Source of the DNA: Lytechinus pictus
Lineage: Eukaryota
Reading direction: 5' to 3'
NCBI RefSeq assembly: GCF_037042905.1
Contig: NC_087249.1
Location: 18,786,001-18,850,000 of the forward strand
DNA: 64,000 nt
In this document: positions 6,201 through 63,970 of the stretch, one piece after another
Layout: every line of letters begins with the position of its first letter
How positions within the stretch are numbered: the first letter of the stretch is position 1
Translations under genes and position numbers: made by a program
Notes under the pieces: generated by a model
Seen by the model: only the letters and a program-made list of their open reading frames with translations
Databases searched by the model: none
What the model was told of the DNA's origin: nothing

Positions 6201-9200
6201 GAAATCAGATACAGAAAATTTCAGGTCCCACATATAGGGGGTCGGATGTACATACATGTATTATGGAATTGCCCATCTTTGAATCAGCTTTCACTTCTAA
6301 ACTTGAACAATAATTTCTTAAAGGACAAGTCCACCCCAACAAAAAGTTGATTCAAATAAAAAGAGAAAAATCCAAAAAGCATAACACTGAAAATTTCTTG
6401 AAAATTGGATGTAAAGAAAGTTATGACATTTTAAAGTTTCGCTTAATTTCACAAAACAGTTATATTCACATCCTTGTCGGTATGCAAATGAGGAGACTGA
6501 TGACATCACTCACTTACTATTTCTTTTGCATTTTATTATATGAAATATGAAAATTCAAATTTTCTCCCTGTTTTGTGAAACAACGATTAATTCCTCCCTA
6601 AGCATTGATTAATACTTTATGATTCAATCAAGTTGGTCCTTATTGTCAAATCTGTTAAAAATGAAATATTGTATAATTCAAACAATAAAAAACAAAAGAA
6701 TTAGTGAGTGATGGCCATCATCGACTGTCTCATTTGCATGTCACTGAGTTGTGCATATCACTTCTTTTGTGAAAAATAAGCGAAAATTTAAAATGTCATA
6801 ACTTTCTTATTTGACATCCTATTTTGATAAAAATTTTCAGCATAATGATTGTTTGATTTTTCTCTATTTATTCAAATCAACATTTTTCAGGGGTCGACTT
6901 GACCTTTAAACCTTCTTACATAGTTTGAAATAAAAATTGTGTTGATAAAGGGTTAAAATAATTAAATAAATGATATGTTTATGTGCAGTAGGCTTATTGG
7001 GTTTAGCAATTAAACAGCTAGCTGTAACTAGATAAATGTTGAGTTTGGTAAATTATTTAAATTACATGTAGGTACATAGCTTTGCTCACTCTAATAATCT
7101 TGTGGACATATCAACATGTCTCATAAAATACCATAGTAGATTACAAGTTTCATTTTGATTTTTAGAAAAAGAATAGACTAACTTGAGCAAAATGAAACTA
7201 TAAAACTTTAAAGTCTGTAGAAGAGTTTTATCAAATGTCATTCCACCATTTGACAAGAAACAAGCTAATTTCTTTCAAATCATGCTAAGACTGTGCATCT
7301 CATCCAACACCTTTTTAACTATAAACAGAAAGAGTTCCTTTTGCGACAGCCAACCCTAGCCCTAACCCTAGTAAATACAACATTTGAATGCATATTAATA
7401 CATGTATACATGTATATATATATATATTTTTTTATTTGGGTAGGTGGCTGTCACAAAAGCAACTCTTCCAGAGAAAACTAATTCCCAGAGTATATATATT
7501 TTGTACAACTTACCCCCACATCATCAACCAACATTTTATCCAATCCTACAGGACCAAGAGAGCTTTTGACGATGTTGGCTATTGCAGCTGCAGCCATTAC
7601 TGTTAAGGGAAAAGAAAAAAAAAATTAACATAAGTGCTATAATTCCCATATATACACACACAATTATATTTTTTAACTAGATCTAAAAAATATCATCAAT
7701 TAAATCTAGTCTAGTATTAAAGTCTACCAATTGAGCATGTTGATTTTATACAGAATTTGAGTATTCTGACAGAGTCTGAACTTCCGAAGAATTAACAGCC
7801 ATTGATCACATCTGCCGCCCTCTATATGCGTGTTGTAGCTTAGCTACTAACAAAGAGGACAAGATGGTGATGCAAACATCGGTAAGAAAATCACATCCTC
7901 TCATAATAAATTTCTGGGGTTTTTTTTACGTATATTTATATCAATAATGAATAAAAGACGGAAATGAATTTCTACCCCATTAACCTATTACCTACATGTA
8001 TTACTGGATTTACTGGAAAAATGCAGAGGTCTGCAGTCGAGTTTCCAGGTCTATCTTTCATTCAAAGTATTTGTATCTTCCTCCTCAAAGTTTGCTCGAA
8101 CAGTGTCAGTGCCCAGTGTGCATGAAGGACAGTATGGCTAATAAAAATTCTTATCCTACATGTATCATTCCCAAGGATGACAGTAGTTAGACAATTCCAC
8201 TCTGCATTCCAGAATTTATCAAGCCTGGCTTTGAAGGAGTTTACAGATGGAACAGAGACAACTTCATTAGGTAGTGAGTTCCAGTCATGAACTACTCTAA
8301 CTCTGAACGCATTTGTTCTAACATCCAATCTGCTTTTATTCTGGAAGAGTATGAAGGGATGACCTCGAGTTGCCTCAACAGCATAGATGAAAAGAACATA
8401 TCCTTTTCAAACCTGTCTATTCCATGCACTATTTTATAAGTCTGAATCATGTCACCTCTTCTCATTCTGTATTTTTAGAGGGATAGTACATGTAGTTTTA
8501 GGGCTCGAAGTCTGTCCCCATGACCATAGTCTAGCATTGCCAAGGAATTTATAAGTTTTGTTGCTCTTCTTTGTGATAATTTAGGGCTAGAACTTTTACA
8601 GAGAAAGTAGAAATCTTGGGGGTAAAAGTTTCAATTTTTCCCATCCTAGCTATACATAGATTCTACATGTAGGCACAATCTCTGGCTCCGTGGAGGGTAA
8701 GCAAATGCGAGTGAATGAGTTTTACTCTCTAGGAGCTCCCTGGCTAGTTTTAATTAGGGGACTCTATTATTTGCATCCATAAGTGACCGCTACATGTAAC
8801 TTCAGCAAACTTTAATGCCATTATTATGGATAGCCCCTCCCAGATCCCACCTCCCTAGTCCCTACCCTGGCAGAGAGGAGGCTGCAGGAATGGGGAGGGC
8901 CATTAATCAATTAGTTCTAGTCTAGATCTATTTCATTTACGTTAGAAGGTCCAAATGCTGGGACGAGTTGGGTGAAGTTAGTGACCACTTTTGTGTGCAA
9001 ATTATTTACAAATAGGGCATGTTTATGTTTCCACTTTTCAGACCAGAAATCCAGAATCACCCTTTTCATATGTGATTACCGGTAGTCCAAAACACGGTTG
9101 CATCCATGCTTACTTTCATTTAAACGACGACGTTTAACTGTAGGCTACGATAAAAAAAGATGGCAAAATGACAACAATAACAGACTGTAAGTAAATGCTT

Positions 9201-12200
9201 GTGCTCTTAATTATTTTTCGCATTTTTTTCTATTTGAATATTAAAATATGCGCACCAATAGTGCATGCGAGGGGTTAATAAAGTTTTAGCCCATTTACAT
9301 AAGTTTGGGCTCAAAACTAACCCTAAAGAAAATGAGTATTTTGGAGCAACATTGTTGTCTCCAAGATACTCCGTATGTGTGGAGCAATGGCTCCGTGGAG
9401 AGAAAGCCTACGTGAGTAGAATGATTTTTACTCTCCAGGAGCCTCCTGGCTAGTCACGATCCGACTGACTCTTCTTAGTACAGTATGGCAAGTTCCCCCT
9501 AGTCTGCGCAGTCCCCCTTGTCTGCGCACACGTGTATCTGAGCGATTCTAAGAAGATACGCAACGAACACAAACTTTACACATGCAATACATAAACAGAT
9601 ATTCATTAAAAAATCTGACTCATAATGGTGGAAAAATAATTAATTTGGGCATGTGACCTTTCCATGAGCCTTTCTCATCAAAATCCCCAAATCGTGTGCA
9701 AAGTGAATGGGTTCGCAGACATGGGGTAGTCTAGACCAAAAGCTTCGGACTCTGTTCTATTGGTTGTTCCCCTGAACTCTATTGGCTCCACTCACCAATT
9801 ACAGAGACCGAAGTTCTAACTTCTAACTTGATCTGTAAAGGGACTCAATCATGTCAATGGCCATGTTTAAATGTGGGCAAGTCCAAGAAAAGGTCACCCT
9901 AGAAGGCAAAATTTCATCTTTGATTTAAGAAGTTATCTTTGGTGGGGTAAGAAAGCCCAAATGTTGAATTTTCAAATATCATTAAGAAAATTTTGATAAC
10001 ATGCATATTTATGCTAATTTGGGGCACCTAATTTGCATAATTGGTAAAATGGGCGTTACGTATGGGACAATTATAAAAACTCATAAAATATCAAAACAAA
10101 ACTTGTGAGATTTAGTCATAGGTGGGACATGGACCCCCTAACATCTTATTGCTTTTGGGGGAAGAAAGTGGTGTCATCTAATCAAATATGCAAATTAGGT
10201 CTTGTCCAAGGATGGAATGTCCCATACAAGATGAAAACATGAAAATGAGAGATTTCCAGCTTATTCCAATTCACAGAGTTTTAATGACAAACTTTTTTTC
10301 AAAAAAATCAGCTTTTTTCTGGTCCCGTACGTCACAGCGCATATTAATTAAAATATTACATCGTTAATGGAATTGTGGATCACTAATTTTTTTACTGAAT
10401 AAAGAGGGCACAACTGGCCTTCCAAAATCCATGAAAGATTCTCTGTTGCGCATTTATTTTTTATGTTACACAACTTTAAAGTCTCTAAATGTCCCGTACG
10501 TCACAAGTCAAATAGCTTGGACCTGCCCCAATTCAAAGCATACTCCCAACACGGCCAGAGTTCATTGACCTATAAATGACCTTTGATCTTGGCCATGTTC
10601 CTGAAACGTGCACAGGGTATTCAGAGACATTGCTGCTCTTATGTCCAAGTTTCATGAACTAGGTCAATATACTTTCTAAGTTATGATGACATTTGAAAAA
10701 CTTAACCTTGGTTCAGATTTCAATGTTGACGACGACGCTGTCGCCGCTGCCGTCAGAAAAGCGGCGCCTATATAGTCTCGCTCTGCTATGCAGGCGAGAC
10801 AAAAACTCTTTTGTTATTTCCATATTTTAAATTATTCTAATTTTTGAAATTATGGGGAAAATTGTGTACGTTCTCTTATTTCTCTTGGTAGGACAACGAA
10901 AAAAACGAAACAGCATTTCTACTAAAAAGCATTATCTTGATATATTCTTTATTAATAGCATTATTGTCAAAAATATTGCTCAAAACTTACCATAAAATTT
11001 CCTTAATAGTGAAAATAAAGGCTTAAATTCTCCATAAAATGTAATGCATACAACATTTTGGCCCATCCCCATAGGCTATACTGTGTGGGCTAGTGGCGCG
11101 CGGTTTGCATGCTGTCGCCAAGCGAAAGACAAAGAAATCAAGATGGCGACGTAAACACGGCCGTAAGCTCTTCCCGTCTTTTCATAACATTTTTCTCGTT
11201 TTTTTATGAATTCTTGTTTAAAAATGAAATCAATATTGTAGAAATGTCGGAAATGAAGTTGTACCCCATGTACACAATTTAGGGCTAGATCTTTTAGAGG
11301 GAAAGTAGAAATCTCGGGGGGCGAAAGTTTCAGGTTTTGGGACGGTATGTGTAGCTGTATGGGAAGCAATTCCAGGCTTCATGGGGAGTAAGCCTACGTA
11401 TAGTAGACTGATTTTTACTCTCCAGGAGCCTCCAGGCTACATGTATGTACAAGGAGAACATTTTTTTTAATGTTAAAAAACTCGAAGCAGATGCAGGCCT
11501 CTCAATTAACTTTAATTTTTGGAAGTCAGCCGGGTACCCTGGACTGAACTTTAGGTGGTCAAATGGCAGTTTAGGTGGTCATCACATGCATATTGTATCA
11601 TGACAAATTGTAAAGTGTATCAACTCTGTATGTGTAAGTTTGCTGCGAAACACTACATTACTGGTGGAACCTTTCTGTGGATTAAAAAGGACAAACTCAA
11701 GCCTTTGTTTCAAAGGAGATTTAAAAAATTACTCATGATCCTTTTCACACCTTTGTTTACTTGACACTTGTTCATTTTTAGACTTAAAGTTAGAGGTACG
11801 TTTTAAAATGAACAAGTGTCAATGAAATTTCCTGAAATAAAAGCATGATCATGGTTATGATAAATTTATTGTCAAAACATCACATCAAGTTAACAGTCGT
11901 TGCCACGGAAAAGTTGAAGTGCACTCACTCCATAAAGTGAATAAAGTGTGATAAAATATTATCAAACCAAGACTTGTTGTCATGATTTGGTCCGTCACAT
12001 ATGTAAACTATTTTTTTCCTTTTTTTACCCCCAATACTAAATGTACTTGGATGAGGCAAAACATAAACAAGTGATCATGATTGTCGATGTCCATTTCCCA
12101 ACATCACAAAATGTGTCCTCAATCACCAAATTATACACAACAAGCTCACCACACGATGAATTTGATACTATAATGAAAGGACTTAACTTTTATTTCAAGT

Positions 12201-14232
12201 TCAATAGGCCGATCAATGAAAAAAAAAAAACTTAAATCAGCCGATGAATATCATGAATTGTAAAATACTTGAATTAGCCAATAAATATTTATGGGCTAAT
12301 GCAAGTATTTTACAATTCACGATATTCATCGGCCAATTGAATTTTTTTTTTTTTTTAATTGGCACTGCTCATATCGTCGCCCTCTCTTATACGCGTCTTG
12401 TAACTAGGCTACGAACAAAGACGGAAATATGGCGTCAAGATCATCGGTGAGTATCTGCTCATCTTCTTACATGATTTTTCTTAATATTTGTATAATTATT
12501 CTTGAGAAAAAAAACGTTATGAGTGCCTAATGGGGGGAAATGAACTTCTTTTCCATTTACGAAATTGTGTGATAAGCAAGTTAAACAAATCAAGTATTTT
12601 GGAGCAACATTGTTGTCTCCAAATACTCTCCTTCGTGTGGGCCTATGCTCATGATGCTTTGCCATGCCAGGCTTCATAGGAGTAAGCCTACGTATAGTTA
12701 ATAGTAGATCATAGATGACTTTTACTCCCCAGAAGCCTCCCTGGGCCTGTTGCATGACGAGATGAGCGATACGTAAGAATGTCCTAGGACCATTCTTCCG
12801 AGATAGGAAGATTGGCGACAAATCAGCGCTTTCCATTTCACGAAGGCAATTTTGTCTTTCAAGTCCACGACATCGTTTGATATCGATAGTATCGGAAAAA
12901 TATTTAGTCTTCATCGTCACCTGAACCTTTTATTTCGGAATGACGACTTTTCATAAAATCATATATTTCAATAAAAGGGGATCAAATAATGTTTTATTTA
13001 TTACTGATTGTAGAATTGATCTATGGAGCGTACTTTATGAGGTAAAAAGATAAATTTAAAAACTTTCAAGATTCACAAACATAACTGGATAAAATCGAAA
13101 TTTTCATTATGTCCCTTATTTAGAACATGGTGACCTTTTAGAGACACCTTTCATTGATATTTCAACGAAAGAGACCCTTGTCTGACATAAAAATTGAGTT
13201 AACTAAGTAATTTCGACATTTTATTAGTTCAATATACTGATTTTTTATTGAATACATATATATAATGATGATTTTGCAAATTACGCGTTAATATATTATC
13301 TGTTGAGGTAGAAATAGGGTTTGAATGGAGTAAACAAAATCAAGTGTCTGATTGTATGAGACTAAAATGAAAAATATGAGAGGCTGCCTGGAAAAAAAAA
13401 CGCGTTTTAAAACACACCGTTTAAAACGCGCCAACCCTGCTTGCCGTAAACGCATTTTCTCTTAATGCCGACAGTGGCGGGCGGTGTGCAAAGAAGATCA
13501 TGCCTACGTAGGACATGTCTGGAGGTGTCTTTCCAAGGACCATTCTTCGTATCGCCCAAATCGGCTTCGTGAAACTTTGTGAAACAGTTGAGCGATATCT
13601 CGTTCTTACGTAGAATGGTTCTACGAAAGACCCTTTCATGCAACAGGCCCCCTGCTAAGCCCGGGCACTATTAGTATTACCTGACTTTTAGGGTGCCCGA
13701 CGGAGCTTTAACGTTAGGCGGTCAATGGCCCCCAGACCGCGCCGCCACCAATTTCGAGCCCTGCCGATGGCTGCCAGCTGTCTAAGTTTTACTAAGTATA
13801 GTCTACCATTTTTTTTTTCAATCTGAAAATGAGTGCCCGAGCATGCCGAGGTTTCATCCAACTCCAAGAAAATCCTATTTCTTTCAAATCTTTACATGCT
13901 TTATGATCAATTTGGTACACTGACTTACTCATAATAATTTAAGGAACTCTTTATTATCTGAAAGATTTTGTGAAATTAAAAGAAATTCATGTTAAATATG
14001 ACCTCAAATTGTTAGGCCTAACGAAATAACGTTAGGTCATGTAAGTAATGTGCGCAGACTTTTTGGCACCACCATTCATACAAAATTACAATTTCTTACA
14101 AAATGTCAATCTTTTCGTCTCGACTCGTCTTGATACTCACTGATTAATTACATAAAACTCACCATTTTGTGTCCTCACTGTATCTCCCGATGTCCTCTCC
14201 CCACTGACAGTCAACTGTTTTAGGGTAGACAT
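266..14232 (-). CDS. TCP1: T-complex protein 1 subunit alpha (CCT1), exons 1-9; the 3' exons lie left of the window
   Basis: Coding exons (minus): 14163-14232, 7514-7599, 5543-5671, 4948-5045, 4294-4404, 2984-3165, 2446-2572, 1281-1456, 266-389. All junctions are GT-AG and phases are consistent. Translation: [104 protein letters not shown]... It contains the chaperonin GDGTT motif and the CCT-alpha-type [14 protein letters not shown]. Confidence 0.97.
1542..1725. mobile_element. GC-rich MITE with a ~37 bp TIR
   Basis: TCGTCACCTTCCCGGACCAAGGCCATTAGCGCGCACT versus AGTGCGCGCTAACGGCCTTTGTGCGGGAAGGTGACGA. Confidence 0.7.
2222..2392. mobile_element. MITE with TAGACCTTTTGCAT TIR
   Basis: TAGACCTTTTGCATTGATGTCAT ... 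ATGACATCCTATGCAAAAGGTCTA. Confidence 0.7.
3705..4245 (-). mobile_element. L2-type LINE 3' end
   Basis: Degenerate ...YVPPHRLRS...YGQRSF....P.LW.. FKSFLKT.LF C-terminus, then a 3' UTR ending GCGCTTAATAAAT and an (ATT)n tail. Confidence 0.7.
5705..5985. repeat. Degenerate (GGT/GAT)n microsatellite
   Basis: Low-complexity trinucleotide tract that generates spurious His/Gly-rich ORFs. Confidence 0.85.
6076..6274. mobile_element. Short MITE with GGGCAATTCCATA TIR
   Basis: GGGCAATTCCATA...TATGGAATTGCCC, with an inner inverted pair TCCGACCCC / GGGGTCGGA. Confidence 0.65.
6322..6905. mobile_element. Kolobok-like MITE (AGG...CCT ends, TTAA flanks)
   Basis: TTAA at 6318-6321 and 6906-6909; long imperfect TIRs AGGACAAGTCCACCCC...GGGGTCGACTTGACCT. 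Related copies at about 28072-28561 and 52740-53343. Confidence 0.75.
7990..8578 (-). mobile_element. CR1 LINE 3' fragment inserted into module copy 1 of TCP1 intron 1
   Basis: Minus-strand RRATKL...[16 protein letters not shown]...[30 protein letters not shown] is the typical CR1 ORF2 end. The left (3' UTR) boundary is approximate. Confidence 0.85.
9875..10529. mobile_element. MITE with GGGCAAGTCCAAG TIR
   Basis: GGGCAAGTCCAAG ... CTTGGACCTGCCC; internal repeated GTCCCGTACGTCACA. Confidence 0.6.
10530..10806 (-). mobile_element. Diverged partial HINE-like copy
   Basis: Shares GTCTCGCTCTGCTATGCAGGCGAGACAAAAA, the GCC/GAC microsatellite and one repeat unit with the 41.6 kb and 61.2 kb copies. 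Confidence 0.7.
12236..12340. repeat. Near-perfect ~100 bp palindrome (fold-back element core)
   Basis: GCCGATGAATATCATGAATTGTAAAATACTTG...CAAGTATTTTACAATTCACGATATTCATCGGC. Confidence 0.75.
12743..13651. mobile_element. PIF/Harbinger-like MITE interrupting the end of module copy 4
   Basis: TIR GGGCCTGTTGCATGA / TCATGCAACAGGCCC with CTG flanks; internal direct repeat AGGACCATTCTTC. Confidence 0.7.
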
Positions 14233-14924
14233 GATATAAGCTTTATATTACCATTAATTAAACGACGAAAAAATTACTGTACTTCGGCAGTAGATCCAAC
14301 GTTACCGGGTTCGTTTCCATGCACAATTTCGATTAGATGGGATCGATCTGCTGTACAATTTCCCATAGAGAAAATTATGCTCAAGCGATCGCGAGCATGC
14401 TTCTGTATTAATAATTGGTCGTTGATGGCGGTTTATAGCACATGAGCAACGTACTATAAATGATACTGATATCAAAGAAGTGCTCTTTCAAAAGCGTATT
14501 ACTAGGTCAGCGTAAAATGGTGATTAATTTACCCTTTTTATGACTTGCCAGTCATCATCGTCATAAGATTATTTGATTAATACTATATGAGAAATATTTC
14601 AGGTGTTTTATTAACTTAATTTATGATAATTATCAAGTTAAAGCCGAGAGTGCCGAACTCATTTGAACCTCTTCAGTACTACATGGGAAACAGCTAGACT
14701 TTTGTATCTTTGAATGATCAGTCTTTGTAGACCTACTAGAATTTTCTATAATACTGTAATGATTGAGAAGAACTGTGAGTCAGTGTGAAAAGTTTTTAAA
14801 AAAATACATAAATTTGTGTTTTGAATTCAAAAGTAGGATTTTGTTACTGAGGTGGCAAGTTAATTCTTTGTTAAATCCTTAAAATATAAGAATAAATTTA
14901 TTTTTACTTGTTTATTTTACAATT

Positions 14925-61988: not shown

Positions 61989-62759
61989 TGAAAAGAAGGT
62001 AGAGGAACAAAATAAGAAGAATAAAAAAAGGGGAAAAAGAACAAGGAAATAGAATAGAATAGAAGAAAAGAATGAAGGAGAAAGAAAGAATTAAGCAAAT
62101 AATTCAAACGAAAATAACTTATTTCTTTCAAAGAAAAAACCAAACCCGTTGCTAAAATAGTCATCTTGACTGGTTACCAGACAAACCAAACGAAGGAAGA
62201 AGCAAGAAGAATTTACGGAACTAGACTCATGAATATTAACAACATCTTTCTCCGATGCATCAAATAATAGCCTTTTGTCAGGGCCTTCTGTTGTATTTTC
62301 TATATGGACTTTAGTGGTATTGGCAAGATCTGATGATAACATGAACGTACTAAAATCGCGTAATATTATTTTTCAATTTCTTATAAGTATGCTTTTATTC
62401 TCTTACATTTTTTCTTTTCTCTTTTTTTTCTGTTTTTGTCCGTTTGGTGATAAAAATTGATTTATCTTGTGTGCCTCGTCTAAAGGCTATATCGATCCTT
62501 AATTGCTTCCTGTATGAACTACTTTTAACGCACACCAGCTAATTTTTCCGACGTTTTTGCCTAGTTTTGAGGAACGGCTATAGTGCGGCTAAATTTATGA
62601 GTATATAGATTTCCTTTGTTACATTTTCTTTCCAATTTTATTCTTTTAAGTGTGATTACAGATAAGCCTGAGTCTAATCGATTTTAAAATCAGTGTTCGA
62701 TCGATGTCTTCGAGCGCCGGTGCAGATTTTGCAAAATCGGTGCATCGAAAAAAAGAATA

Positions 62760-63970
62760 GAGTGCATCATAGTGTTGAAACTTTGCTTGTCAATCTATCT
62801 AATGACATCTTGAAAGACATGGATAATGGAAAAATTACTGTTCTCTCACTTCTTGACTTATCTTCAGCATTTGACACTGTCAATCATACAATCATGCTAA
62901 ATACTCTGAGATCCCTTGGGGTTGATGGGATAGCTCTAGAGTGGTTTAAGTCATACCTATCTGAAAGGTTTCAAGTAGTCTGTATTAATAATTCAAAGAG
63001 AGATCCTGCTGAATTAGTTCATGGTGTACCGCAGGGATCAGTCGGAGGCCCGACCCTTTTCTCATTGTACTTGGGTGGTCTTAAACAGATTTTAAGATGC
63101 CATTGTTTTAAATATCATTGTTATGCAGATGATATCCAACTGTACACATCATTCCTACCTAACCAGACCAATGCCATTCATACTGTAAAAAGTCTTGAGG
63201 CTTGTGTTCACGATATCAATAGGTGGATGAGCTGCAATTCTTTAAAATTAAATGAAGATAAATCTGAGCTGCTGTTTATTGGCTCTAAAGCTGCACTAGA
63301 TAAGATAATACTTCCCTCTTTGAGAATAGGTAATGCTAATGTTATGCCATCAAAATCATGCAGGAATCTTGGAGTTTTGTTTGACTCAACAATGTCTATG
63401 TCTGCCCAGATCACTGCCGTGTGTAAATCAGTCAGGTATCAATTGCGTAATTTAGGCATCATTCGCAAGTATTTAACCCGCTCCGCTACAGAAAAGATAA
63501 TACATGCTCTGATATCATCTTGACTTGATTTTGGCAATTCTCTTTTGTTTCAGCTTCCACAATCCCAACTCTCACGCTTACAAAAATTACAGAATTCTGC
63601 AGCCCGTATTGTTACCCTTATCAGACGCTCTACTCACATAACTCCAGTTCTGTCCTCACTGCATTGGTTTCCCATCGAGTACCATATTGCATTTAAGTTA
63701 TTATTGTTAGTTTTTTACTGTATCCATGGATCTGCCCCAGAATATAATGTTAATTTGTTGATGCCATACAATCCTCCTCGACGTTTAAGATCTTCTGATT
63801 CAAATTGCTTACAGTTCCTAAATCCAAGAAATCATGGGGGGATCGGTCATTTGCACATGCTGGGCCATCCTTGTGGAATCAGTTGCCATATTTCAATCGT
63901 AGTATTTCAAATATCGATAATTTCAAAATTGCTCTAAAAACCCATTTGTTTAAAATTGCCTTCCAGTAGT
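62760..63970 (+). mobile_element. 5'-truncated L2/CR1-group LINE, degenerate reverse transcriptase
   Basis: HSVET, LLDLSSAFDTVNH, GVPQGSVGGPTLF, YADDIQLY, NLGVLFDS, LQKLQNSAAR, LHWFP. In-frame TGA at 63521 and a frameshift near 63810; the other frame ends ...FKIALKTHLF. Confidence 0.93.

What the first reader, a model, noticed from the sequence alone, without database searches (positions are those of the whole stretch)
7807..12745. Four-copy array of a transcript-like module antisense to TCP1 in intron 1
Seen: four co-oriented + strand copies, each about 300 bp from the ATGG core to the end once the CR1 insertion in copy 1 is removed. They alternate between two subtypes (A: copies 1 and 3; B: copies 2 and 4). 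Most of the body is strongly diverged, yet every copy keeps three things: (i) an AAGATGG/ATATGGCG core (7861, 9157, 11140, ATG at 12429), which is a YY1-type motif and start-codon context; (ii) a GTAAG/GTGAG 5' splice donor about 20-30 nt later (7882, 9187, 11163, 12447); (iii) a terminal hairpin overlapping a TTTTACTCYCYAG acceptor-like site. I found no clear TIRs or TSDs and no convincing copy elsewhere in the window. Inference: either a cluster of small spliced or structured non-coding RNA genes antisense to TCP1, or an unclassified non-autonomous element that repeatedly targets or duplicates within this intron. No peptide is conserved (copies 2 and 3 stop within 4 codons).
Basis: partly seen in the sequence, partly recalled or inferred. 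Interest (0 to 1): 0.7.

Follow-up and report, generated by a model that had tools for sequence, protein, structure and literature searches.

The report
Four transposon copies in TCP1 intron
The four "transcript-like modules" are real, but they are four separate insertions of a small non-coding mobile element with well over a thousand copies across this sea urchin genome, so this is ordinary repeat DNA and not a cluster of RNA genes.

Summary
Four co-oriented + strand modules lie in intron 1 of TCP1, which is on the - strand. Each has the ATGG core, a GTRAG about 20 nt later, and a terminal hairpin over TTTTACTCYCYAG.

They are not a local array. Each copy is most similar to copies on other chromosomes: up to 94% for copy 3, 90-92% for copy 4, 82% for copy 2 and 78-89% for copy 1. 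The four are only about 60-71% alike to each other. The 26-nt tail motif occurs 1,192 times genome-wide, and 0 times for the reversed control.

Copies elsewhere show the following:
- a fixed 5' end, with 5' truncation more common than 3' truncation;
- short inverted duplications of the 5' end;
- frequent head-to-head units, in which an inverted 5'-truncated copy abuts a full copy, flanked by exact 8-bp target duplications, one with paralogous empty sites.

Single copies lack target duplications. The 3' hairpin is 96.7% paired, and 6 pairs show compensatory changes. These features match published Penelope-like-element insertions. No autonomous partner was found, and about six Penelope families tested do not share the tail.

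Stranded RNA-seq shows almost no + strand RNA over copies 1, 2 and 4. No splice joints over the modules appeared among the 15 joints the tool listed.

Best reading: a non-autonomous retroelement family. Interest is low.

The parts
7808..7984 (+). Copy 1, 5' part: head, ATGG core at 7863, GTAAG at about 7882, T-rich stretch, CCCAT block.
   Evidence: Dispersed relatives are 72-89% identical and begin at query positions 29-34 of the 7780-7990 query.
7985..8575 (-). Secondary insertion that splits copy 1. It is a 5'-truncated LINE 3' fragment with a CR1/L2-like C-terminal motif.
   Evidence: Copy 1 aligns to the other copies only once this stretch is removed. The LINE type was judged by eye from the translation and was not tested against a library.
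8576..8746 (+). Copy 1, 3' part: subtype-A middle block and the terminal hairpin (arms 8684-8700 / 8722-8737), ending in CCCTGGCTA.
9135..9452 (+). Copy 2, an old copy of the C-type subfamily. ATGG is at 9160, GTAAG at 9187, and the hairpin arms are 9389-9405 / 9428-9443.
   Evidence: 1,089 first-look candidates, best relatives 70-82% identical. Also.
11097..11440 (+). Copy 3, A-type, full length with the canonical 5' end CGCGCGGTTTGC. ATGG is at 11143, GTAAG at 11163, and the hairpin arms are 11375-11391 / 11415-11430.
   Evidence: 1,795 first-look candidates, and all 40 scored match at 85-94% identity on many contigs. Also.
12208..12286 (-). Inverted duplication of copy 4's own 5' end, forming a head-to-head palindrome with 12287-12363.
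   Evidence: I1 has 68-nt arms, 90% complementary, with 0 nt between them; see also I13; other B-type loci carry only one arm.
12287..12746 (+). Copy 4, B-type, with an extra 85-nt leader. ATGG is at 12429, GTGAG at 12447, the hairpin arms are about 12670-12685 / 12722-12737, there is a 13-nt insertion at 12699-12711, and the terminus is degenerate.
   Evidence: 286 first-look candidates, best relatives 90-92% identical. Also.
7513..7602 (-). TCP1 (CCT-alpha) exon 2, the lower boundary of intron 1.
   Evidence: the translation reads [29 protein letters not shown]; reads lie with first mate on + only, which calibrates library strandedness.
14163..14234 (-). TCP1 exon 1 coding part ([23 protein letters not shown]), the upper boundary of intron 1.

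Best explanation
The four modules are four independent, differently aged insertions of distinct subfamilies of one dispersed, non-coding mobile-element superfamily. Elements are 345-435 bp, and at least 1,200 well-preserved tails occur genome-wide. This part is shown.

The most likely mechanism is retrotransposition by a reverse transcriptase supplied in trans. This part is inferred.
1. The element is transcribed from its own 5' end. An internal promoter that includes the conserved AAGATGGCG box is plausible.
2. The conserved, covarying 3' stem-loop ending in ...CCWGGCTA is the recognition and priming site.
3. A partner endonuclease nicks the target with an 8-bp stagger, and cDNA is primed at the nick.
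4. When both nicks prime, the result is a full copy joined head-to-head to an inverted 5'-truncated copy, flanked by an 8-bp duplication.
5. When only one nick primes, the 5' end is joined without a duplication, often after snap-back copying that leaves a short palindrome.

This signature is the one published for Penelope-like elements. The modules therefore behave like pseudo-LTR-only, non-autonomous Penelope-dependent units that lack a hammerhead ribozyme. The conserved ATG mini-exon, GTRAG donor and polypyrimidine-AG near the end would be element-borne, like the retained intron in the Penelope pseudo-LTR, and not a host gene.

In the TCP1 intron the copies are passengers. The antisense orientation is what selection tolerates for an element that carries strong splice signals.
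For: Dispersed family:
- Searches give 1,795, 286, 1,089 and 133 first-look candidates. All scored candidates match, on many contigs.
- One search finds 1,192 tail-pattern matches against 0 for the reversed control.

Independent insertions:
- Each copy's best relatives lie elsewhere, while the window copies are about 60-71% alike to each other.

RNA-mediated signature:
- The 5' end is fixed whatever lies upstream.
- Among bystander copies, about 16 independent 5'-truncated copies keep the 3' end, against about 5 of the reverse kind.
- Inverted duplications of the 5' head occur in L003, L010, L027, window copy 4 and the copy-1 family.
- In head-to-head units the inverted arm always keeps the terminal TAGCCTGG, while its inner end varies from query position 110 to 333.
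- These units carry 8-bp duplications, exact in four of five: GTCTAGGC, CCCAGACA, GGCACAGC and, with one mismatch, (C/T)GTAAGGG, plus GTCATGAC with paralogous empty sites.
- Among the first 100 tails listed there are 10 head-to-head pairs and 0 tail-to-tail pairs.
- L002 has an 8-bp duplication lying 32 nt beyond the end. A poly-C run follows the 3' end in three independent loci: L002, L004/L005 (a segmental duplicate pair) and L011.
- Partial tandems occur in L008, L013 and L018.

Functional 3' structure:
- 16 pairs are 96.7% paired, 6 pairs show changes on both sides, and 0 of 500 shuffles reach the observed score.
- G-U cells number 32 against 12 A-C cells, which favours the + strand.

Published parallels for Penelope-like elements:
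- 5' truncation, an inverted 5'-truncated copy at the 5' end, and an optional 30-40 bp tail (PMC8557442).
- 8-10 bp duplications with inverted pseudo-LTRs; insertions with no duplication; 18- and 38-bp 5' palindromes; solo pseudo-LTRs; trans-mobilisation by pseudo-LTRs alone (PMC3846280).
- Cleavage and extension of both DNA strands in vitro (PMC11167929).

Penelope-like ORFs with GIY-YIG domains, up to 1,026 aa, exist in this genome.
Against: - No autonomous partner was found. The 3' flanks of 15 GIY-YIG loci, about six Penelope families, share nothing with the module tail. One 4.3-kb candidate bounded by outward-facing tails has no long ORF.
- There is no hammerhead ribozyme, unlike canonical Penelope pseudo-LTRs and animal retrozymes.
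- A uniform 8-bp duplication with terminal inverted repeats starting TAG is also the hAT hallmark.
- RNA-seq showed no transcripts starting at the canonical 5' end. No donor-to-acceptor joints appeared among those listed, so the promoter and intron are untested.
Confidence: 0.6

Rival explanations
1. The element is a SINE-like retroposon mobilised by a stringent-type LINE (for example CR1, L2 or Rex1) whose reverse transcriptase recognises the 3' stem-loop. It is not mobilised by a Penelope-like element.
For: The RNA-mediated signature is the same: a fixed 5' end, 5' truncation, and a covarying 3' stem-loop. LINEs are abundant here, with a LINE fragment inside copy 1 and an RVT_1 ORF at 62693-63523. 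No tested Penelope family shares the tail.
Against: There is no tRNA, 5S or 7SL head, no poly-A and no microsatellite tail. Head-to-head units in which both arms start at the extreme 3' terminus, palindromes at the junction, and 8-bp duplications are the published Penelope pattern (PMC3846280, PMC8557442); from general knowledge, L1 twin priming does not produce this pattern. The LINE fragment in copy 1 has an unrelated tail.
Confidence: 0.15
2. The element is a cut-and-paste DNA transposon derivative, a hAT-like or Mutator-like MITE. The head-to-head units are the mobile form, and the single copies are deletion products.
For: Exact 8-bp duplications occur in four of five two-ended units, with one mismatch in the fifth, and one unit has paralogous empty sites. 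The terminal inverted repeats begin TAGCC. One duplication, GTCATGAC, fits the hAT nTnnnnAn pattern.
Against: - Most copies have only one end (about 80% of tails are unpaired), yet they are the youngest and most abundant, at 94% identity.
- The length of the left arm varies from 51 to 253 nt, while the right copy always starts at the same 5' base. Deletions would not do that.
- Four of the five duplications do not fit nTnnnnAn.
- 5' truncation predominates.
Confidence: 0.15
3. The element is a non-autonomous Helitron or Helentron, of the HINE kind (DINE-1/Tsp-like) described from sea urchin. It would move by rolling-circle transposition, with the 3' hairpin acting as terminator.
For: Single copies lack target duplications. 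The 5' flank often reads A|TC. There is a hairpin next to a terminal CTA(G). DINE-1-like elements are reported in sea urchin (PMC4067079).
Against: - The base after GGCTA is C, G, A or T in similar numbers, not T.
- There are no subterminal inverted repeats matching the 5' end.
- There are no T strings at the boundaries.
- Two-ended units carry 8-bp duplications, which rolling-circle insertion does not make.
Confidence: 0.04
4. The modules are functional small RNA genes, spliced-leader-like or snRNA-like: a short exon, a GU donor, a U-rich site and a 3' hairpin, clustered antisense to TCP1.
For: The ATGG core, the GTRAG and the 3' hairpin are conserved across subfamilies that are otherwise about 60% alike. 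The hairpin covaries.
Against: - More than a thousand dispersed, decaying, truncated and inverted copies exist.
- No RNA family matches.
- + strand RNA depth is 0-1.3 over copies 1, 2 and 4, with no read starts or ends piling up.
- Whole-element folding is no better than shuffled sequence, z = -1.2.
Confidence: 0.02

Closest known systems
Penelope-like element pseudo-LTRs and non-autonomous Penelope-dependent units (solo or trans-acting pseudo-LTRs in Adineta vaga, MRC1 in Chlamydomonas, animal non-LTR retrozymes)
   Same: - 5' truncation.
- An inverted 5'-truncated copy abutting the 5' end.
- Palindromes at that junction.
- 8-10 bp duplications, or none.
- An occasional extension of about 30 nt beyond the end.
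- Partial tandems.
- Association with (C)n.
- An element-borne start, donor and acceptor like the intron in the Penelope pseudo-LTR.
- No coding capacity.
   Different: There is no hammerhead ribozyme. The tail is not shared with any of the roughly six Penelope families tested here. Copies are mostly dispersed singles and not tandem arrays. The partner is unidentified.
SINEs that depend on stringent-type LINEs through a shared 3' stem-loop
   Same: Short, non-coding and high in copy number, with variable heads on a common, structurally conserved 3' end and frequent 5' truncation.
   Different: There is no pol III-type head (tRNA, 5S or 7SL) and no A-rich or microsatellite tail. Head-to-head double-ended insertions are not typical of these SINEs.
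hAT-type MITEs
   Same: The two-ended form has 8-bp target duplications and inverted termini beginning TAG.
   Different: Most copies have one end only. Arm length is variable. A fixed 5' end with snap-back palindromes is not a MITE feature.
Helentron-derived HINEs (DINE-1 / Tsp)
   Same: Non-coding, with a 3' stem-loop. Reported in sea urchin. Single copies lack duplications.
   Different: There are no subterminal inverted repeats, no TT target and no T strings. Two-ended units carry 8-bp duplications.
Spliced-leader RNA genes
   Same: A superficial layout of short exon, GU donor, U-rich tract and 3' hairpin.
   Different: The module is three times longer than an SL RNA gene, is dispersed and decaying, is not expressed from these loci, and matches no RNA family.

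Membership tests
Interspersed repeat / transposable element | Many dispersed copies with unrelated flanks. | tested here: met
   (1,192 tails, control 0). Flanks differ between loci.
Retroelement inserted by target-primed reverse transcription | A constant 3' end with frequent 5' truncation. | tested here: met
   about 16 independent 5'-truncated copies keep the 3' end, against about 5 of the reverse kind.
Retroelement inserted by target-primed reverse transcription | An RNA intermediate: transcripts starting at the canonical 5' end. | tested here: inconclusive
   no read-start pile-ups. Only family-level reads on both strands over copy 3. Each run was sampled at about 6%.
Penelope-like element (or dependent on one) | An inverted 5'-truncated copy adjacent to the 5' end, partial tandems, and junction palindromes. 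| tested here: met
   10 head-to-head pairs against 0 tail-to-tail pairs.
Penelope-like element (or dependent on one) | Short target duplications with inverted ends, and other insertions with none. | tested here: met
   8-bp duplications in all five two-ended units, exact in four of them. None in most single copies.
Penelope-like element (or dependent on one) | 3' sequence shared with an autonomous element encoding RT plus a GIY-YIG endonuclease. | tested here: not met
   15 GIY-YIG 3' flanks, about six families, show no similarity.
Penelope-like element (or dependent on one) | A hammerhead ribozyme in the pseudo-LTR (canonical clades and retrozymes). | tested here: not met
   Searches found no hammerhead at E <= 1 and E <= 0.1. 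Naiad and Chlamys clades also lack one (PMC8557442).
hAT MITE | Terminal inverted repeats at both ends of essentially all copies, with 8-bp duplications. | tested here: not met
   About 80% of tails are unpaired. Single copies lack duplications.
Helitron / Helentron non-autonomous | Insertion at A^T or within TT without duplication, with a fixed flank base after the 3' end. | tested here: not met
   The base after GGCTA varies. Two-ended units carry 8-bp duplications.
tRNA/5S/7SL-derived SINE | A head derived from a pol III gene. | tested here: not met
   ARAGORN found 0 genes. Rfam found nothing.
Small ncRNA gene cluster (snRNA / SL RNA) | Discrete + strand transcripts from the loci, and an RNA family match. 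| tested here: not met
   + strand depth 0-1.3 over copies 1, 2 and 4, with no starts or ends; no family match.

The most novel reading that the evidence does not exclude
The modules may represent a ribozyme-less superfamily of pseudo-LTR-like non-autonomous retroelements in echinoids. Their conserved ATG mini-exon, GTRAG donor and terminal polypyrimidine-AG would form a genuinely retained, functional intron, as in Penelope. The elements would also home to the neighbourhood of older copies, or to promoter-proximal introns of active genes. That would explain four independent hits in 5 kb, where roughly 0.02-0.06 copies are expected by chance.
Probability: 0.3. Interest if true: 0.4.

Novelty: new member of a known kind. 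Interest (0 to 1): 0.2.

Why it matters
For genome annotation, this shows that conserved start-like, splice-like and hairpin motifs in an intron can belong to a mobile element and need not mark a hidden gene. The stretch should be masked as repeat.

For transposon biology the family is a modestly useful case. Its insertion signature matches the Penelope-like one very closely, yet it has no ribozyme and no identified partner. It also has a 3' stem-loop with clear compensatory changes, and it tends to land near older copies. Finding its partner would show which reverse transcriptase reads that stem-loop.

Tried and rejected
- Rfam at permissive thresholds on the region and on 20 related loci gave only weak miRNA-like hits on palindromes. 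ARAGORN found nothing.
- Whole-element folds on either strand are no better than shuffled sequence, z = -1.2 and -1.45.
- The search for target duplications around single copies (exact 7-8-mers, one mismatch allowed, up to 400 nt upstream) found none beyond chance, except in L002.
- The search for an autonomous partner led nowhere:
  - ORFs next to copies are unrelated LINE or LTR fragments.
  - 15 GIY-YIG 3' flanks do not share the tail.
  - One 4.3-kb interval between outward-facing tails has no long ORF.
- The 1985 Tsp transposon paper is not held, and literature searches found no description of this family.
- Earlier scan notes by sequence were blank.
- The read-laying output lists only the 15 best-supported joints, all from the repeat at 10.5-10.8 kb, so donor-to-acceptor joints over the modules could not be inspected.
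Exons were read separately.

Full report
**Observation**

The region was read directly. A repeat search found four co-oriented copies sharing a 38-nt terminal block, a 41-nt internal block and subtype-specific blocks.
- an ATGG core;
- GTAAG or GTGAG about 20 nt later;
- a terminal hairpin over TTTTACTCYCYAG.

The A/B alternation of the middle block is real, but copies 1 and 4 share their 5' head, so the copies are mosaics. No further copy lies elsewhere in the window.

TCP1 is on the - strand. The exon 1 coding part is 14163-14234 and exon 2 is 7513-7602, so all four copies lie antisense in intron 1, 7603-14162.

**Not a local array**

Each copy, searched against the window's own genome (812 Mb), has many dispersed relatives.

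| Copy | First-look candidates | Best relatives elsewhere |
|---|---|---|
| 3 | 1,795 (all 40 scored match) | 85-94% |
| 4 | 286 | 84-92% |
| 2 | 1,089 | 70-82% |
| 1 (5' half) | 133 | 72-89% |

The window copies are only about 60-71% alike to each other outside the tail. They are therefore four independent insertions of different subfamilies and ages, not duplicates.

A 26-nt degenerate tail pattern with at most one mismatch occurs 620 + 572 = 1,192 times genome-wide. The reversed control occurs 0 times. In the loci I hold, this pattern catches about half to two thirds of recognisable tails. The family therefore has a few thousand recognisable copies at least.

**Anatomy of copies elsewhere**

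For the copy-3 type, the element starts at a fixed base (…AAAT|CGCGCGGTTTGCGTGCTGTCGCC) and ends at …CCAGGAGCCTCCAGGCTA. The flanks are unrelated between loci, and the next base is C, G, A or T. Three structural classes appear.

1. Single copies have no target duplication. The exception is L002, where an 8-bp TATATAAT repeat lies 32 nt beyond the end, after a poly-C run. A poly-C run also follows the end in L004/L005 and L011.
2. Some copies have their 5' end preceded by an inverted duplicate of their own first 8-86 nt (L003, L010, L027). Window copy 4 is one of these: 12208-12286 mirrors 12287-12363. The copy-1 family shows the same.
3. Head-to-head units have an inverted copy that always keeps the extreme terminus TAGCCTGG. 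It is truncated internally at varying points and abuts the canonical 5' end of a full copy. All five such units examined carry 8-bp duplications, exact in four of them:
   - GTCTAGGC, CCCAGACA, GGCACAGC and, with one mismatch, (C/T)GTAAGGG;
   - GTCATGAC, for a B-type unit nested in a longer repeat whose other copies provide empty sites.

Among the first 100 tails listed genome-wide there are 10 head-to-head pairs within 1.4 kb and no tail-to-tail pair.

Among bystander copies in the fetched loci, 5'-truncated copies that keep the 3' end outnumber the reverse by about 16 to 5 independent cases. Partial tandems also occur.

**The hairpin**

Across 64 tails from several subfamilies, a 16-pair stem is 96.7% paired. 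The stem pairs GGCTYC-(N)-TGGGGAGTAA with TTACTCYCCA-GRAGCC. When partners are slid, pairing falls to about 50%. Six pairs show changes on both sides, for example U-A/G-C 46/15, U-A/C-G 35/28 and G-C/A-U 30/21. No shuffle out of 500 reaches the observed covariation.

These counts reflect a handful of subfamily-level events. They do show that master copies were selected for the structure. G-U cells outnumber A-C cells 32 to 12, which favours the + strand as the folded strand. Apart from this stem, the element folds no better than shuffled sequence.

This agrees with the companion first-stage note on the hairpin.

**What it is not**

- No Rfam family reaches even permissive thresholds in the region or in 20 loci: no hammerhead, tRNA, 5S, 7SL or snRNA.
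- ARAGORN finds no tRNA.
- In three stranded, rRNA-depleted RNA-seq runs of the same species, TCP1 exon 2 is covered only by pairs whose first mate lies on +. This fixes the library polarity.
- Module-sense reads have mean depth 0-1.3 over copies 1, 2 and 4.
- The reads over copy 3 lie on both strands and mostly over the subtype-A block. They carry fixed differences at 11275, 11276 and 11316, so they come from other family members.
- No read starts or ends pile up.
- The 15 joints the tool listed all come from a different repeat at 10.5-10.8 kb. Joints over the modules could not be inspected further.

The ncRNA-gene-cluster reading is therefore not supported.

**Mechanism**

Several features point to a cDNA copied from an RNA whose 5' end is the canonical start:
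- the fixed 5' end regardless of what lies upstream;
- the predominance of 5' truncation;
- snap-back palindromes at the 5' end;
- double-ended units in which both arms begin at the extreme 3' terminus.

Priming would occur at one or at both staggered nicks.

This is the pattern published for Penelope-like elements:
- 5' truncation, an inverted 5'-truncated copy at the 5' end, an optional 30-40 bp tail, microsatellite or (C)n targets, and a transcription start plus intron inside the pseudo-LTR (PMC8557442);
- 8-, 9- and 10-bp duplications when inverted pseudo-LTRs flank the insert, other insertions with none, 18- and 38-bp palindromes at the pseudo-LTR 5' end, solo pseudo-LTRs, and trans-mobilisation by pseudo-LTRs alone (PMC3846280);
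- cleavage and extension of both strands in vitro (PMC11167929).

Across eight subfamily representatives that are otherwise about 60% alike, AAGATGGCG, the GTRAG 18-22 nt later and the terminal polypyrimidine-AG are conserved. The best explanation is element-borne promoter, first-exon and intron signals. This is inferred and not shown.

**Limits**

Penelope-like ORFs with GIY-YIG domains are present in the genome, with at least 59 matches and ORFs up to 1,026 aa, several in inverted pairs. The 3' flanks of 15 of them, about six families and some with canonical hammerhead cores, share nothing with the module tail. A 4.3-kb interval between outward-facing tails has no long ORF.

A LINE partner or a hAT-like origin cannot be excluded.

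The hAT-like rival is weakened by three findings:
- most copies are single-ended, and these include the youngest;
- arm length is variable while the right-hand breakpoint is constant;
- four of the five duplications do not fit the hAT target pattern.

**Why four in one intron**

With a few thousand copies in 812 Mb, about 0.02-0.06 copies are expected in 5 kb, so four is not chance. In the fetched loci, at least 12 of about 70 independent loci carry a further independent copy, often of another subfamily, within 1.5 kb. About 1-3% would be expected.

The family therefore tends to land near older copies or in the same permissive neighbourhoods. Shared orientation of four copies has a 1-in-8 chance and is not significant on its own. 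An antisense orientation is what selection would tolerate for an element that carries a strong donor and acceptor.

**Verdict**

The feature is an ordinary non-autonomous mobile-element family, most likely retrotransposed with a Penelope-like signature. Interest is low.

Noticed in passing
window 10528-10805: RNA reads pile up here at mean depth about 1,470-1,940 in three stranded runs. Almost all come from - strand RNA. Hundreds of reads join 10709 back to 10573, a 137-nt period, which suggests a tandem unit in other copies of this repeat or a circular RNA. No Rfam family matches.
   Followed up: no
window 9567-9960: Another repeat is covered on both strands at about 30-40x, with fixed mismatches, so the reads come from other copies.
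   Followed up: no
window 7985-8575 (- strand): A 5'-truncated LINE 3' fragment with a CR1/L2-like C-terminal motif is inserted into copy 1. Its tail is unrelated to the module tail.
   Followed up: partly
window 12208-12363: A near-perfect palindrome gave weak miRNA-like Rfam hits (MIR6145 at 39.7 bits, below the gathering score). It is the inverted duplication of copy 4's own 5' end and not a miRNA gene.
   Followed up: yes
window 62693-63523 (+ strand): An ORF with a reverse transcriptase domain (RVT_1, E = 5e-25). It is a LINE-type element near the window end.
   Followed up: no
L046, L054, L044, L039, L059, L058 and others (whole loci): A repeat family longer than 3.3 kb, 92-97% alike between loci, carries a B-type module as a nested insertion with the 8-bp duplication GTCATGAC. 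The repeat contains an internal inverted unit of about 230 nt. Its nature is unknown.
   Followed up: partly
L083:526, L085:321, L092:535(-), L094:204: Penelope-like 3' regions downstream of GIY-YIG domains carry the canonical hammerhead core (CTGATGA...GAAA). Canonical ribozyme-bearing Penelope families therefore coexist with the ribozyme-less modules.
   Followed up: partly
window 7520, 7550, 7589 (TCP1 exon 2): Run X24 (organism B) differs from the window at all three sites in every read, while runs X21-X23 (organism A) match. The window therefore comes from organism A, and the module family is also present in organism B's RNA.
   Followed up: no
window 12719-12915: Read depth is about 9-21, higher than over TCP1 exon 2, with fixed differences at 12776 and 12780. 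This is probably yet another repeat just beyond copy 4.
   Followed up: no
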